A stretch of DNA of 64,000 nt. Origin: Dicyema japonicum. Its lineage: Eukaryota; Animalia; Dicyemida. The translations under genes were made by a program, and so were the position numbers. This document shows positions 40,624 through 48,018 of this stretch, in pieces. Under the pieces are notes generated by a model. That model was not told the DNA's origin. It was given only the letters and a program-made list of their open reading frames with translations, and made no database searches. The DNA is taken from NCBI GenBank assembly GCA_011109175.1, contig RDEW01000006.1, forward strand, positions 1,324,133 through 1,388,132, given 5' to 3'. Position 1 is the first letter of the stretch; the number at the start of each line of letters is the position of its first letter.

Positions 40624-42092
<1,469 letters not shown>

Positions 42093-42229
42093 TTTTTACT
42101 GAATTAGATTAGGTTTTACTGTAATTATGAACTCAACGTCATATTGCCTGCAAAATATAATTATTAATTGTTAAAATGACGACACTAATTAACTTGTATA
42201 TATAATTGTAGATTTACTATCATGGATAA

Positions 42230-44260
42230 ATGGCCAAATATTTTACTAGGTTGTCTTCGCAGGATATTGATGAATACCCACAATTTGATATTGTTCACAA
42301 ATTACCAAAACTTCCTCTTCCTCAAATTAATTCTACTATAAGTAAATACATTCAAGGATTGGAACCTCTTTTGAACCAAGATGAGTTTAATCAAGTCAAG
42401 AGTTTCGCAGATAATTTTTTAAAATCTCCTAAAATTGGACAAGTAGCATTTTTTCTTCAACAAGAATTCCAAAACACAGAAAACTGGGTAGATAGTTATA
42501 TATTTGTAAGGCAATCAAACTATGGAGAGAACATTTTTATTTAAAAAATAGACAAAGCTTACCTGTAAATTCAAATCCATCGTTAATTTTACCTCCACAA
42601 AATTTTGAAAAAAGGGAAGATTTCATAAAGTTTAATTGTTAGTTATTAAGTTATCTCTGCAAATTTATTATGGGGATTATAGAATTTATAGAAATGCTAA
42701 AAAAGTATATATTTATAATAATGAAAGAGGATTGGTAACTGTAGATAGAGCAAACACAAGAGAGAAGGGACAGCCTCTTTGTATGGATCAGTACAATAAA
42801 TTATTCAAATCATATAGAAAACCAGGAATTTTAATAGACTCCTGTAAAATATATTCTATTTATGAACCCAATCAACACATAGTAATAATTCATAATAATA
42901 ATGTATTATATTATTTATTATAGTTCTACAAAATTAATGTTTATAGGAATTATGAAATAATATCCTTACAAGAACTAATTATGGTGGTATCATCCATAAT
43001 GACTGAGCAAGACGTTGGTCCCCCAATAGGAGTTTTGACTAGTCTAAATAGGGATCAATGGGCTAGCTTGTATGAAATGCTTAGAGATAGTAATAAAATA
43101 TTAAAATTAGATTTAATCAATTCTAATTCAATAAAGGAAATCGAAAAGAGTTTGTTTTTGGTTGGAATTGACGGGGATATTGAAACAAATTATAATTCAG
43201 AAATAGCCAAGCATATGTTGCATGCTTATTCAAACTACAATACGTGCAATAGATGGTTTGACAAAACACTACAGGTTATTTTTAATAATATTTTAGATTA
43301 TTGCATCCTCTAATGGATATTTTGCAATTAATTATGAACATTCTGTCGCTGAGGGATCAGTTTTAATAAAAATGGTAGAGCATATACATAACTACATGTG
43401 GGAATTTATAAATATTTAGGAATCAACTCTGTGTAACTAATATTACATGTGTTTACACTTTGGAAAGATTAACTTGGGATCTTCCAGAGTGGGCAGTAGA
43501 CTCAATAAATAAAGCAATTGAGCAATCTAAAAGAATAAAGGAAATTTTTGATTTTGTTGTATATACTTACGAGGAATATGGGAAAGATAGGATTAAGGAG
43601 TTCAAAATGAGTCCGGATGCTTACATTCAACTTTCATTACAATATGCTTATTATATGTGTGAATTGTGATTAAATTAATAGGACTCATGGAAGGATGGTG
43701 AACACATATGAAAGTGGCTCTACTAGGAGATTTAGACTGGGAAGAGTTGAAAACATTAGATCTGCTACCAGTTCTGCTTTAGAATGGATATTATACCCAA
43801 ATAAAGTTTTTTATATAATATTTGAAGGATTTAACAAAATATAATTTATTTAAATGTGCCATGGAACACCAAGTCATGCTTATGACTGATGCTGTACAAG
43901 GAAAAGGAATTGATTGTCATTTATTGGCAATAGAACAGGCATCCTACAAATTTGGACTGGAAACTGATTTATTTACACACTCTTCCTATAAAATGTTTAT
44001 AAACGACTTTATTCTATCGACTAGTCAAGTTAACATATTTATTGTTTGTAGAATTTAGTATCCGGAGAGGGATTTATGTGTTATGGGCCTGTACAACCTA
44101 ACGGATATGGAGTGTCATACAATCCTCATTCTTCATGTATTATGTTTTGTATTGCTTCTTTTGCTGTTAGATTTGTGTATATTTGTAGAACAACTGTGGT
44201 TTAGCAGAAAATATAAAATTAGCACTAAATGAGATGGGAGCTTTGTGTAGTCTTTATTAA
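42230..44260 (+). CDS. CHAT: Choline/carnitine acyltransferase family, choline-acetyltransferase-like, multi-exon
   Basis: [30 protein letters not shown], catalytic YEHS (His at 43339-41), [42 protein letters not shown]. Family assignment is secure; ChAT versus CrAT rests on motif comparison. Confidence 0.75.
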
Positions 44261-44325
44261 TTATATAACAATTATGTTGTCAAGCAACCAAATTAATTTT
44301 AATATCTAAGCTGGTAATTAAGTTG

Positions 44326-46975
44326 ATGAGTGAACAAGATTCTGTAAATACTGAAGATTTCGCCTATCAATTCGAACAGGTCTGCAATGACGGCTTGTTG
44401 GAGGGTAAATTTTAATATTATCAAGTAAATCATAATCTCTTTTATTCTACACAAGATGACCCAATAATTAATAATGCAGACGTGGTTGATGTCCACCAAA
44501 ATACTTGGTCATTAAAGACGGATGATGGTTCTCCTAATATTTATTAATGAGAATCAATCATAAGTGATGCTGCAACCATGCAGAAAATGTCCAAGAAAAG
44601 TTCATTTAAACAGGATTACGAAATTGTAATATTTTATTAATAAAAAGACACTGGATGACTCACCACATAAACCACCTGTAAATTAGTGACTAATAGTAGA
44701 CTGAATCATCAATGACTAAAAGAGACATTATGAGGGTACAACGAGAGTTAGATAATATTTTGTAATATTAAATGTTATTTAAGAATCAAAAAGAGTTTTG
44801 AGGAGGAAAGACTATGTTCTATACAAAATGATATAAAAAGGGAACGTCAGGATCTCCAAAGATATGCAACCCAAATCCAGGATATTGAAGATGCCATTGA
44901 GTCCAAGAGAATAGAATTGGATAACCTTACATCATGTGACATTGTAGTTTTCTAATTATTAATTAGGATAAACTGAGAGATGAAAATCAACTCATGAAAG
45001 TAAAACTGTCCAAAATGGAGAATATTGAAGATAATGAGGAAACCAAACTCAAAATCCGTAAACTTGAGAGCGCGCACAGACAGTCTATTGTTGAGGAGAA
45101 GACAAAATGTGAAAATTTAGAAAAGGTAATGATTACTTGTGAATAGACACTCAAAACAAAATCAGAACTGTTCAAAAGGAGAGAGGATGAACTAGAAAAA
45201 ACAAATAAGAGTTTAAAGAGTGAATGTCAATCAAGTGCTAATAAAATAAAAGAATTAGAACAAGTCATCGTTTAGTTTATTCCTAGAATATGGAATCCAG
45301 TAGAATTGAGAAAAATTTACTCAAGGAAACTGTTGCCCGTCTTGAACAAGAAAATAAAGATTTTTGGCATAAGATGGAAAAGGATGAAGCAGCAATGGCT
45401 CTAATGATATCACGTGGGCATGATAGTTCACTGTTGGAAGCAAATGTGCATTTTCTTATGGACGAACGACAGAAATTGAACGACAAAATAAACAAATCGA
45501 ACTCTATTAGGGAAAGGGAACTGGAAAAGATAAAAAATTTGGAGTCAACTATTACTAAAAAGGAAGATTCCATCAAATCACTTATGGAAACTAATTCCAG
45601 TAATGAAAAAGAAATATTCAGACTTTCTCAGTCTAATGAGGCATTTAAGAATGAGTTGGAATTAAGTAGATCTCATTACCAAAATCAGATATACGGTATT
45701 CAAATTCAAAATGATGCCGAAAATACAAGCAGGTGGACTGCATTAAAGAAATATTATGAAGAATTATACAGTAGATACCAGATAGAGATGGAAAATAGAA
45801 TGAAAGAAGCAAATGAAAAGCATAACATTGAGTTACAGGTGGAGGAGTTTGATCATTTCAGAGTAAGGAAAATACAATATTACAATTGAGTAAAGAGATT
45901 GGATTGAATCGTAATAAAATGGAACAAGAGGCAATAAGACATGCAAATGACAGAGAATTATTGGTTATTTGCTAGACTCATACTAGATGAGAGAATGGGA
46001 AACTTTAATTCAAAATGAAAAAAATAATAATAATACTTTAATTATGGAGTTTAAAGAAAAAATTGAAGATTTGAAGCAGAAATTGGAAGATGTTACAAAA
46101 CGAGAAATGGAAAAACACGTAAATCTTCAAAACGAAGCAAAGAACCAACAAAAAATAATTTTTGAGTTGGAAAATAAATTGGAAAGAAAAAGCAAAGAAA
46201 TGGAGTTTGGAATAAAAAAAGCCCGTAAAGAGGCAATAGAGGAAGTTAGTAATGATGTAAGCTGTACACGTACTAACATGGAAAAAATAAATATGGTTTA
46301 TTATAATTAACATAGGAAAGGAACACAATTCAACAGTTTCCAGTTTGTTAGACAGTCTGAGGAGACAGGAGACTGAGATTATATCACTTAGGAGTTTATT
46401 AAAGGAATCAAAATCACGTGGAATACCTAACCAAACGAATGAACGGGAAATTAATGAATTAAGCACTCAATGTCTTAGAATGTCAAGAGTTTTGAATAAT
46501 ATGACACATTTGGGATGTCCTCAATTGGAGACATCAAAGGTAAATGTTGGGACAGTCTCCGAACATTTACGGATTATTATTGCAAGACTTGAAGTATTAA
46601 ATGACAAGAGGAATTATAATTTTGCTGTAAAGAGTGGGCAATCCAATATGCAGGTTTATAATATTTAATGTGTAGATTTTGATCAAACAATTATGTCACG
46701 TGTCTTTGAATCTCCTAAATTTGATGTTACCATTAAAGTAATATTTAGGAGAGTCTCAATAAACAAGGCAACATTAAATACACAATCATATTCACGGGCA
46801 CTTAAGGAATTGGAGTTTGAACTCTACAATATTGAGATGGTATGGTTTAATAATCCACGTGTAGTGCTATGGAGGGAGTGGACGTCATTTTAGAAATTTT
46901 AGTCTTCCAGTCAATAGTAAGGAGATTGTGGATGTTTTGGTTGAGCTTAAAGAATGTGTGACTGAGAAATATTAG
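44326..46975 (+). CDS. Long coiled-coil protein of unknown family, multi-exon; may be fused to the downstream TBC ORF
   Basis: E/K/Q-rich ORF pieces (45290-45889, 45987-46310, 46345-46668) are joined by 21-25 nt GT-AG segments, e.g. 45126-45146 and 46840-46864. Start and end are predicted by eye. Confidence 0.7.
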
Positions 46976-46999
46976 TTTTAATAAATATTACTAAGCAAC

Positions 47000-48018
47000 A
47001 TGCCTGTCGATAAGTTTGGCTTTGTAGATTCTAACAATTCCCAATTAGAAATAAAAATAAAACCAAGACTAACAAAACTTAAAGAAATTAAGTATTATGA
47101 TGCTTTCAGTGGAAATATCAAATTTATAGAAAAGGTAGTATTTTAACATATATAGGTTAAACTATGTAGAAGAGGCATTCCTAACTCAATTAGGGATTTT
47201 GTGTGGTCTCGCTTACTAAAAGTTGGACAAATTAGAGAATGTTACTCTGAGGATTATTTTGTTAACCAAATTATATAAAATAGAATAAATTGTGTAATAT
47301 AGAATCCGAATACTCTGACATTATAATGAATGATGTAAAGAGAGAGATTCCTAATCATATTTACTTTCAGAAAGACAAAATAGGGTTTTAGTAATAATAA
47401 TAATAAGACAAATGACTTTGTATTCAATATTGAATGCATTTGCTAATCACAAGCCTGAGGTTGGATATTGTCAAGCACAATGCCCAGTGGGGGCACTTAT
47501 TGTAACTAGATTTCCAGCAGAAAGTGCCTTTTGGATATTCGTGGCCATTTATGATAATATATTAAATGGGTACTATCTACCAAACTTTGTAAATTGTAAT
47601 ATGTATTATAGAGTTATGAATTTAATGACATTAAAACATTATTTGTGTTTGTCAAACATTTTAAAAATATTAACAAAAAGATATTAAATATTAAAGTAAT
47701 AAATATTATAAATTGAGGATAAATTAGATATTGATTTTAATAGTCTTTTTATTGATTGGTTTGATTGCATTTTTATTAGGACTCTACCATGGCCAACATT
47801 ATTGAGAGTCTTAGATATGTTGTTTTGTGAAGGTTTATATATTTATTATTTTAGGAAAAATTGTTTTGTTTAGAACATCACTAACTCTCATTAAAATAGG
47901 AGTCAATAATGGACGACTTGATAATATTGAAAGTGTTTTCTTTGCTTTTAAAAGAATTCCAGTAAATTTACTTAATGAAAATAATTTTATTAAAGAATAT
48001 TTTAATGTTAAAATATAA
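47000..48018 (+). CDS. TBC1D10: TBC-domain RabGAP, TBC1D10/EPI64-like, multi-exon
   Basis: [28 protein letters not shown] (family signature), [24 protein letters not shown]. Confidence 0.85.

What the first reader, a model, noticed from the sequence alone, without database searches (positions are those of the whole stretch)
46973..47002. 21-nt segment carrying a stop codon and a poly(A) signal; its removal fuses the coiled-coil and TBC ORFs in frame
Seen: the coiled-coil frame ends ...AAA TAT TAG (46973-75). The G of that TAG starts GTTTTAATAAATATTACTAAG (46975-46995), a 21-nt GT-AG segment shaped like the other introns and containing AATAAA (46980-85). Splicing it out gives TAT TAC AAC ATG CCT GTC GAT, in frame with the TBC1D10-like ORF. 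Inference: one locus could make a coiled-coil-only protein (retention plus polyadenylation) or a coiled-coil-TBC RabGAP fusion (splicing), a binary switch encoded in 21 nt. I do not know of an N-terminal long coiled-coil on TBC1D10 proteins. The reading depends on the predicted 25-nt intron at 46840-64.
Basis: partly seen in the sequence, partly recalled or inferred. Interest (0 to 1): 0.75.

Follow-up and report, generated by a model that had tools for sequence, protein, structure and literature searches.

The report
Tiny spacer that looks like an intron
In the octopus parasite Dicyema japonicum, 21 bases between a coiled-coil gene and a RabGAP gene could be read either as a gene spacer or as one of its tiny introns; sequence alone cannot decide, and nothing shows it is a special switch.

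Summary
The letters are as described: TAG at 46973-75, a 21-nt GT...AG segment at 46975-95 holding AATAAA, and ATG at 47000. Removing the segment keeps the frame. The genome is the Dicyema japonicum assembly (67.5 Mb, 377 scaffolds; 19-25-nt introns).

The segment's features carry little information:
- All six 3n introns among 34 confident local introns hold an in-frame stop.
- AATAAA is expected by composition in about 6% of introns.
- The segment's splice-site score is below 33 of 34 true introns and equals that of decoys.
- Three certain introns nearby are also followed by ATG within 4 nt.

Tight co-oriented gene pairs are normal here: spacers of 137 and 65 nt in this cluster, and 36 nt between IFT20 and a tRNA endonuclease gene, whose spacer looks much like this one. 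A chance in-frame bridge at a 24-nt spacer has a probability of 1.4-3%.

The link between the upstream 36-codon exon and the coiled-coil gene rests on weak introns. At least six consistent gene ends exist.

No RNA or orthologue was reachable. My odds:
- Two genes: about 0.55.
- One spliced coiled-coil-TBC gene: about 0.28.
- A regulated switch: about 0.1.

Public RNA-seq would settle it.

The parts
46975..46995 (+). The 21-nt GT...AG segment. It is either most of the 24-nt spacer between two genes or a micro-intron.
   Evidence: Read. Interior G+C is 0.06. Splice-site score with length is 8.0, in the lowest 9% of true introns, and 66 decoys in 8.4 kb score as high. Without GT/AG and length the score is -1.7, which is neutral between intron and decoy.
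46973..46975 (+). TAG stop of the 36-codon frame-1 block. Its G is the first base of the GT.
46980..46985 (+). AATAAA hexamer, 5 nt after the stop
   Evidence: The same hexamer is seen in 2 of 34 true introns, and 5.6% is expected by composition. It also lies 6 nt after the IFT20 stop in a verified 36-nt gene spacer.
47000..48018 (+). TBC RabGAP gene: 7 exons and 6 introns of 21-23 nt, 294 aa if it starts at ATG 47000, stop TAA at 48016-18. The Arg finger (I-x-x-D-x-x-R in ..IIMNDVKRE..) and the Gln finger (Y-C-Q in ..GYCQAQ..) are present.
   Evidence: Gene model. Pfam RabGAP-TBC E=8.3e-11 on exon 47409-47588. Best PDB sequence matches are RABGAP1L, USP6NL and RABGAP1. The Atlas gives TBC clusters.
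46865..46972 (+). 36-codon block that ends at the TAG: the putative last exon upstream of the segment
   Evidence: Codon score is +0.09 bits/codon, in the top 5% of chance ORFs and the lowest 18% of true exons. The part 46904-46972 scores +0.22. G+C is 0.33. There is no family match.
46749..46839 (+). Frame-0 coding block (..RVSINKATLNTQSYSRALKELEFELYNIEM), probably an exon of the coiled-coil gene
   Evidence: Codon score is positive. It is reached from the coiled-coil frame through two good introns.
46654..46675 (+). Excellent 22-nt intron at the end of the clear coiled-coil reading frame. Alone it shifts the frame.
   Evidence: Score 14.7, better than 91% of true introns. Interior G+C is 0.11.
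46726..46748 (+). 23-nt intron candidate that restores the frame together with the 22-nt intron, leaving a 50-nt exon at 46676-46725
   Evidence: Score 11.6. The middle exon has a poor codon score, -4.9 bits. The resulting chain is a consistent ORF.
46840..46864 (+). It is weak. Alternatives are 46878-46902 (25 nt) and 46884-46902 (19 nt), or no splice with a stop at 46891-93.
   Evidence: Scores are 3.6, 7.0 and 5.8, against a minimum of 7.2 for true introns. Interior G+C is 0.33, 0.29 and 0.13.
44326..46653 (+). Coiled-coil gene: the secure part, about 12 exons and 11 introns of 20-25 nt, with no family match
   Evidence: Model. The true frame was picked in all exons by a leave-one-gene-out codon model. 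Pfam, PDB, the Atlas and the homology search gave nothing specific.
40624..44260 (+). Context: NDR-type kinase (40624-42092) and carnitine acyltransferase (42230-44260) on the same strand. Stop-to-ATG spacers are 137 and 65 nt.

Best explanation
The 21-nt segment is most of an ordinary, very short AT-rich spacer between two separate genes of a tightly packed, co-oriented gene cluster in Dicyema japonicum. The upstream coiled-coil gene ends at TAG 46973-75, or already at TAG 46891-93. The TBC RabGAP is translated from its own ATG at 47000 as a 294-aa protein that begins three residues before the conserved D-K-F-G-F start of the domain.

The GT arises because a TAG stop is followed by the T-run with which such spacers begin. 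The AG sits 4 nt before the ATG. That the two lie 21 nt apart and in frame is coincidence. If RNA polymerase reads through, the spliceosome may remove the segment now and then and produce a minor read-through fusion, but that is not the purpose of the element.

Shown: the sequence facts, the tight spacing of unrelated genes in this genome, and the lack of information in stop, AATAAA and shape. Inferred: the transcript ends and starts, and the absence or rarity of splicing.
For: (1) Tight co-oriented junctions between unrelated conserved genes are real in this genome. In the same cluster, the NDR kinase to carnitine acyltransferase spacer is 137 nt and the acyltransferase to coiled-coil spacer is 65 nt. 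Elsewhere, the IFT20 stop is followed after 36 nt by the ATG of a tRNA-intron endonuclease whose Pfam match starts at residue 1. A 60-nt spacer precedes UFC1, whose Pfam match starts at residue 4. Earlier scan notes list more such pairs (22-38 nt), which I did not verify.
(2) The spacer here, 'TAG ttttaataaatatt...', resembles the verified IFT20 spacer, 'TAA ttttaaataaataaatatt...', including AATAAA 5-6 nt after the stop.
(3) The ATG sits exactly at the start of the conserved TBC region, in a CAAC-ATG context shared with UFC1.
(4) The segment's splice-site score is below 33 of 34 true introns. It is followed by C, which none of the 34 true introns is.
(5) The upstream exon chain needs an intron weaker than any confident one.
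(6) TBC1D10-type RabGAPs are not known to carry a long N-terminal coiled coil.
Against: (1) A chance in-frame bridge of this quality has a probability of only 1.4-3%. Neither of the two other junctions of the cluster can be bridged.
(2) Inside transcribed gene bodies, GT-AG plus 19-25 nt plus interior G+C of 0.12 or less is almost diagnostic of an intron: 20 true introns against 1-2 exonic decoys. The segment meets all three criteria.
(3) Codon usage and G+C stay exon-like right up to the GT.
(4) A 24-nt spacer is shorter than any spacer I verified myself (36 nt).
(5) A Met just after an acceptor is not rare: 3 of 34 exons.
Confidence: 0.55

Rival explanations
1. The segment is an ordinary, essentially constitutive micro-intron of one long gene. 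That gene encodes a protein of about 1,073 aa with an N-terminal region, about 650 aa of coiled coil and a C-terminal TBC RabGAP domain. The in-frame stop and AATAAA are just the AT-rich content of the intron. The Met at 47000 is an internal residue, or a relic of a former gene start if the fusion arose when a spacer turned into an intron.
For: - GT-AG, 21 nt, interior G+C of 0.06 and frame-preserving removal.
- A consistent 1,073-1,074-aa chain exists.
- In gene bodies such AT-rich GT-AG segments are nearly always introns.
- All 3n introns carry stops.
- Certain introns at 45964-86, 45264-86 and 47385-407 are followed by ATG within 0-4 nt, the last with the same geometry inside the conserved TBC domain.
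- Chance bridging has a probability of only 1.4-3%.
- Codon score is exon-like on both sides.
- Other RabGAP families combine coiled coils with TBC domains (own knowledge: TBC1D2, EVI5, RABGAP1).
Against: - Low splice-site score, and a C after the AG.
- The reading needs a further intron weaker than all 34 confident ones.
- The ATG falls exactly at the domain start.
- The architecture is unknown for TBC1D10-type proteins.
- No relative or transcript was found.
Confidence: 0.28
2. This is the reader's model: a competition in 21 nt. If cleavage and polyadenylation at the AATAAA wins, a coiled-coil-only mRNA results. If splicing wins, the stop and the poly(A) signal are removed and a coiled-coil-TBC fusion is made. 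Both products would be functional and the ratio regulated. A variant adds a third product, TBC alone translated from ATG 47000.
For: - All elements are present at the stated places.
- The combination of an old-looking stop, an ATG and a frame-preserving GT-AG is best explained if both readings are in use, since no coincidence is then needed (reasoning).
- Competition between splicing and polyadenylation is an established mechanism at composite terminal exons (PMC4227790, PMC2926593).
Against: - AATAAA is expected by chance in 5.6% of such segments and is seen in 2 of 34 ordinary introns.
- There is no evidence of either transcript end.
- Cleavage 10-30 nt after AATAAA would fall at or beyond the acceptor, leaving almost no room for regulation.
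- There is no conservation data.
- The upstream gene model is ambiguous.
Confidence: 0.1
3. The exons at 46693-46972 are not the tail of the coiled-coil gene but the N-terminal exons of the TBC gene itself. On this reading the start is ATG 46693 and the protein has 381 aa. The coiled-coil gene ends at TAA 46666-68, 24 nt upstream. The 21-nt segment is then a plain internal intron, and no coiled-coil-TBC fusion exists.
For: - The chain is a consistent ORF.
- Frame-0 coding potential starts near 46678.
- TBC1D10-type proteins usually have 50-100 residues before the D-K-[FY]-G-F motif (own knowledge).
- The scan for 'stop, short gap, ATG' lists 46666/46693 as a non-bridgeable pair.
Against: - It treats the excellent 22-nt intron at 46654-75 (score 14.7) and the 23-nt intron at 46726-48 (score 11.6), which together restore the frame, as chance decoys.
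- It still needs the weak 25-nt intron and a 24-nt spacer.
Confidence: 0.04

Closest known systems
Operon-like or very tightly spaced tandem genes of compact eukaryotic genomes
   Same: Unrelated genes lie on one strand with stop-to-ATG distances of tens of bases: 24-137 nt here and 36 nt at IFT20/tRNA endonuclease. A poly(A)-type hexamer sits right after the stop, and an AG lies just before the next ATG.
   Different: No spliced leader or polycistronic RNA is reported for dicyemids in the searchable literature. One verified spacer (before UFC1) has no AG at all. How downstream genes are transcribed is unknown.
Read-through ('conjoined gene') transcripts, in which the intergenic region is spliced out (PMC5053695)
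   Same: Two adjacent, similarly oriented genes, where removing the intergenic stretch would give an in-frame chimera.
   Different: In the known cases a normal exon of gene 1 is joined to an exon of gene 2 over kilobases, skipping the terminal and first exons. Here the whole spacer itself would be a 21-nt intron, and both full coding regions would be kept.
Composite terminal exon / intronic polyadenylation switches (e.g. Flt1/sFlt1, PMC2926593; PMC4227790)
   Same: A stop codon and a poly(A) signal lie just inside a retained intron, so splicing and 3'-end formation would exclude each other.
   Different: Known switches use introns of hundreds to thousands of bases with mapped poly(A) sites and regulators. 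Here nothing but the hexamer is seen, and it is expected by chance.
Micro-introns of Dicyema japonicum (PMC6736024, PMC13644364, PMC6543705)
   Same: GT-AG, 21 nt, extremely AT-rich, with an in-frame stop as in all local 3n introns.
   Different: The flanking and internal positions score below 33 of 34 confident introns, and the base after the AG is C. Removal has not been shown.

Membership tests
Spliceosomal micro-intron of D. japonicum | GT...AG ends | tested here: met
Spliceosomal micro-intron of D. japonicum | Length within the local range (19-25 nt in 34 confident introns) | tested here: met
   21 nt
Spliceosomal micro-intron of D. japonicum | AT-rich interior set between exon-like flanks | tested here: met
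   Interior G+C is 0.06, against a mean of 0.13 for true introns and 0.33 for exonic decoys. Verified gene spacers are equally AT-rich (0.14-0.25).
Spliceosomal micro-intron of D. japonicum | Splice-site neighbourhood like that of confident introns | tested here: inconclusive
   The score is below 33 of 34 true introns. The density ratio true/decoy is 0.7-1.06. C follows the AG, which happens in 0 of 34 true introns.
Spliceosomal micro-intron of D. japonicum | Coding sequence of one gene on both sides, joined in frame | tested here: inconclusive
   The join is in frame. The downstream exon is certain. The upstream 36-codon block is only weakly coding-like, and its link to any gene needs weak introns.
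Spliceosomal micro-intron of D. japonicum | Removal seen in RNA | not testable with these tools
   No transcript or protein of this locus is in the reachable collections.
Composite terminal exon / intronic polyadenylation switch | Functional poly(A) signal and cleavage site inside the retained intron | tested here: inconclusive
   AATAAA is present, but it occurs in 2 of 34 ordinary introns and 5.6% is expected by composition. Cleavage sites cannot be tested.
Composite terminal exon / intronic polyadenylation switch | Both mRNA forms exist | not testable with these tools
   No RNA data could be reached.
Tight tandem (operon-like) gene pair | Two complete, unrelated genes on one strand separated by less than about 150 nt | tested here: inconclusive
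   This holds for the neighbours (137 and 65 nt) and for IFT20/tRNA endonuclease (36 nt). For this pair it depends on whether the segment is spliced.
Tight tandem (operon-like) gene pair | Polycistronic precursor or trans-splicing | not tested
   No report was found in the literature searched. No spliced-leader gene was sought.
RabGAP-TBC domain protein | Match to the TBC domain model | tested here: met
   PF00566 E=8.3e-11 on one exon. The genome-wide scan lists this locus at 69.5 bits.
RabGAP-TBC domain protein | Catalytic Arg finger (IxxDxxR) and Gln finger (YxQ) | tested here: met
   ..IIMNDVKRE.. in exon 47284-47384 and ..GYCQAQ.. in exon 47408-47588 (translations).
TBC1D10/EPI64 subfamily | Closest to TBC1D10 rather than to other TBC families | not tested
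   Motifs (DKFGF, GYCQAQ, RTLPW) fit my recollection of TBC1D10. The PDB holds no TBC1D10; its best matches are RABGAP1L and USP6NL. Full-length relatives could not be searched because exon-sized queries are barred by length.

The most novel reading that the evidence does not exclude
In a genome whose spliceosome accepts almost any 19-25-nt AT-rich GT...AG stretch, and whose genes sit tens of bases apart, an intergenic spacer has become a working micro-intron. The same 21 bases would then end one mRNA (stop plus poly(A) signal) or, when spliced, weld a coiled-coil gene to a RabGAP gene. This would be a live example of gene fusion by 'intronisation' of a spacer, with the old stop and the old start codon still in place.
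Probability: 0.12. Interest if true: 0.7.

Novelty: new member of a known kind. Interest (0 to 1): 0.35.

Why it matters
If the segment is spliced, D. japonicum would have a RabGAP with a long coiled-coil arm. It would also be an unusually clear case of two neighbouring genes joined through a spacer-turned-intron, which bears on how fusions arise in compact genomes.

If the segment is not spliced, the finding is one more example of very tight gene spacing in this animal. That spacing does not appear in the papers I could search. It raises the question of how downstream genes are transcribed when only 24-36 nt lie between a stop and the next start.

Either way, gene models in this genome cannot be trusted without RNA evidence, because in-frame GT-AG paths are cheap.

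Tried and rejected
- **Ciliate code.** My first thought was a ciliate with TAA/TAG as sense codons. I rejected it because conserved genes end at TAA/TAG (dynein LC8, kinase).
- **Homology searches.** The word search with the 184-aa coiled-coil exon and with TBC exon 4 found nothing. The single length-blind search, spent on TBC exon 1, gave only four low-complexity hits. An exact look-up of the LC8 protein found no record.
- **Family assignment of the coiled-coil exons.** Pfam, PDB and the Atlas gave only generic coiled-coil noise.
- **Second copy.** The locus is single-copy, with no haplotig or paralogue.
- **Supplementary tables.** Those of the genome paper hold no TBC entry.
- **Spliced leader in dicyemids.** I had recalled one from memory. 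It is not in the Pax6/Zic paper nor elsewhere in the library.
- **Greedy longest-ORF parsing.** I rejected it as evidence because it also jumps the true TBC stop. It finds about 960,000 parses of the 680-nt region.
- **BARD1-UGCG 38-nt pair.** A CD20-family search for another noted cluster found nothing.
Full report
**Organism and setting.** The window has standard-code genes split by 19-25-nt GT-AG introns. Its assembly has 67,542,437 bases in 377 pieces. That matches the published Dicyema japonicum genome: 67.5 Mb, 377 scaffolds, mean intron 38 bp (PMC6736024). It is the only animal outside myxozoans with such short introns (PMC13644364). Earlier scan notes reached the same identification.

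The finding lies in a cluster of four genes on the + strand, flanked by transposon-like DNA:
- An NDR-type kinase at 40624-42092.
- A carnitine acyltransferase at 42230-44260.
- A coiled-coil gene from 44326.
- A TBC RabGAP at 47000-48018.

Rfam finds nothing in the window.

**The observation.** The sequence facts are correct. TAG is at 46973-75. GTTTTAATAAATATTACTAAG is at 46975-95. AATAAA is at 46980-85 and ATG at 47000. Removing the segment gives ..[13 protein letters not shown].. in frame.

The TBC gene is secure. It has seven exons and six introns of 21-23 nt. Pfam RabGAP-TBC scores E=8.3e-11 on a single exon. The best PDB matches are RABGAP1L, USP6NL and RABGAP1. Both catalytic fingers are present. 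I could not test 'TBC1D10-like' with tools. It fits the motifs as I remember them.

**How much the segment's features say.** I took 34 confident introns from the four genes. All are GT-AG, 19-25 nt long, with a mean interior G+C of 0.13.
- Only six have a length that is a multiple of three, and all six carry an in-frame stop.
- AATAAA occurs in two of the 34, and 5.6% is expected from composition.

So a stop plus AATAAA in a 21-nt AT-rich segment is unremarkable.

A position-weight model with length gives the segment 8.0 bits. That is in the lowest 9% of true introns scored leave-one-out, and 66 decoys in 8.4 kb reach it. Without GT/AG and length the score is -1.7, below 33 of 34 true introns. 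The density ratio of true intron to decoy is 0.7-1.06. None of the 34 introns is followed by C, whereas this one is. Shape is therefore neutral.

On the other hand, within gene bodies GT-AG plus 19-25 nt plus interior G+C of 0.12 or less picks 20 true introns and only 1-2 exonic decoys. If the segment lies inside a transcript with exons on both sides, I would expect it to be spliced.

**The upstream gene model.** A codon-usage model picked the true frame in 34 of 34 exons with its own gene left out. By it, 46678-46839 (frame 0) and 46865-46972 (frame 1) look coding. They fall in the top 4-5% of chance ORFs and the lower quarter of true exons.

How they hang on the coiled-coil gene is unclear:
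- The best intron in the area is 46654-75 (22 nt, score 14.7). Alone it shifts the frame.
- Together with 46726-48 (23 nt, score 11.6) it restores the frame. That leaves a 50-nt exon with a poor codon score of -4.9 bits.
- The alternative 42-nt intron scores 3.6.
- Its substitutes at 46878-902 and 46884-902 score 7.0 and 5.8.
- Every confident intron scores at least 7.2.

At least six self-consistent ends of the coiled-coil protein exist. They give 698, 715, 758, 777, 778 or 779 aa. Two fused chains of 1,073 and 1,074 aa exist as well. So does a 381-aa TBC protein starting at ATG 46693.

With loose limits the 680-nt region has about 960,000 canonical parses. With strict limits it has 46, of which 12 reach the TBC start in frame, all through the 21-nt segment. 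The two neighbouring gene junctions have none.

**Chance.**
- In simulations of a stop, a 24-nt spacer of spacer-like composition and an ATG, an in-frame GT-AG bridge arises in 1.4% of trials at the observed score or better. It arises in 3% at score 5 or better.
- A Met within the first three codons of an exon occurs in 3 of 34 exons.
- Three certain introns mimic 'stop, short gap, ATG': 45964-86 (ATG at +0), 45264-86 (ATG at +3) and 47385-407 (ATG at +4). The last lies inside the conserved TBC domain and has the same geometry as the candidate.

**Tight gene spacing is normal here.** Within the cluster the stop-to-ATG spacers are 137 and 65 nt. Following leads from earlier scan notes, I verified two more cases:
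- The IFT20 gene (about 135 aa; Pfam on exon 1) ends 36 nt before the ATG of a tRNA-intron endonuclease. The endonuclease's Pfam match starts at residue 1.
- UFC1 starts 60 nt after an upstream ORF.

The IFT20 spacer, 'TAA ttttaaataaataaatattgtttctgagtggaggtg ATG', closely resembles 'TAG ttttaataaatattactaagcaac ATG'. Both have AATAAA 5-6 nt after the stop. None of the five verified spacers can be bridged. All five follow TAA, so no GT arises. Spacers of 22-38 nt reported in other notes were not verified. One of them (BARD1-UGCG) I could not confirm.

**Weighing.**
- Two genes: this needs a spacer of 30 nt or less (my guess is about 0.1 of tight pairs) and a chance bridge (1.4-4%).
- One gene: this needs a novel coiled-coil-TBC architecture (prior of a few percent), a Met by chance (about 0.09, or 1 if it is a relic of a recent fusion) and a low-scoring intron.
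- Both readings need one weak intron upstream, unless the coiled-coil gene ends at TAG 46891-93. In that case the spacer is 106 nt and the 36-codon block is noise.

These rough numbers give about 0.55 for two genes (including the early-stop variant). They give about 0.28 for a constitutive intron in one gene and about 0.1 for a real switch. A few percent go to the reading in which the upstream exons belong to the TBC gene itself.

'Arose by chance' and 'is spliced' are not exclusive. A chance GT-AG in a spacer is how a fusion would begin.

**What could not be done.**
- No RNA, protein or orthologue of this locus could be reached.
- There is no second copy in the genome.
- Searching or folding the joined coiled-coil-TBC protein was left out. 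Local scripts only checked frames, lengths and short junction peptides.
- A genome-wide base rate of tight junctions could not be obtained.

**Comparison with known systems.** The fusion reading is a miniature of read-through 'conjoined gene' transcripts (PMC5053695). The two-gene reading belongs with operon-like tight tandems. No spliced leader or operon is reported for dicyemids in the searchable literature.

**Verdict.** The letters are real. The special meaning given to them is not supported by anything beyond their presence. Public RNA-seq would decide within minutes.

Noticed in passing
window 40624-48018; L002 (minus strand) 1946-1987: Operon-like packing: four unrelated co-oriented genes with 137-, 65- and 24-nt stop-to-ATG gaps. 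Elsewhere, the IFT20 stop is followed after 36 nt by the ATG of a tRNA-intron endonuclease. Such spacing is not mentioned in the dicyemid genome papers I could search.
   Followed up: partly
window 46654-46748: An excellent 22-nt intron (46654-75) breaks the frame unless a 23-nt intron (46726-48) is also removed. That would leave a 50-nt exon whose codon usage looks non-coding, while the other frame looks coding. Possible causes are an assembly indel, a 42-nt intron or overlapping reading frames.
   Followed up: partly
window 40765-47854 (34 introns): Introns whose length is a multiple of three are under-represented (6 of 34, P=0.035). All six carry an in-frame stop. No intron is followed by C. 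This resembles the pattern known from ciliate micro-introns.
   Followed up: partly
window 43090-43110: A 21-nt GT-AG segment made only of A and T lies in frame inside an exon of the carnitine acyltransferase gene. It is either an unrecognised intron or a decoy the spliceosome must ignore.
   Followed up: no
window 1-34000 (e.g. 7150, 17023, 26866): The G+C profile repeats every ~10 kb. Identical 53-nt strings recur 9,873 and 9,843 nt apart, which suggests a tandem array of ~9.85-kb units carrying transposon-like ORFs.
   Followed up: no
L005 (minus strand) 1030-1431 and 1615-1917: A 38-aa stretch is duplicated in tandem inside a UFC1 exon, and another (about 43 aa) inside the gene upstream. 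These may be assembly artefacts from merged haplotypes, or real micro-duplications.
   Followed up: no
G000:C1:2282351-2282839 and 2293114-2293602: The HOGA1-like (DHDPS family) exons occur twice with identical scores, 10,763 nt apart. This is a recent segmental duplication or an assembly duplication.
   Followed up: no
An earlier scan note reports this palindrome as strongly over-represented in this genome.
   Followed up: no
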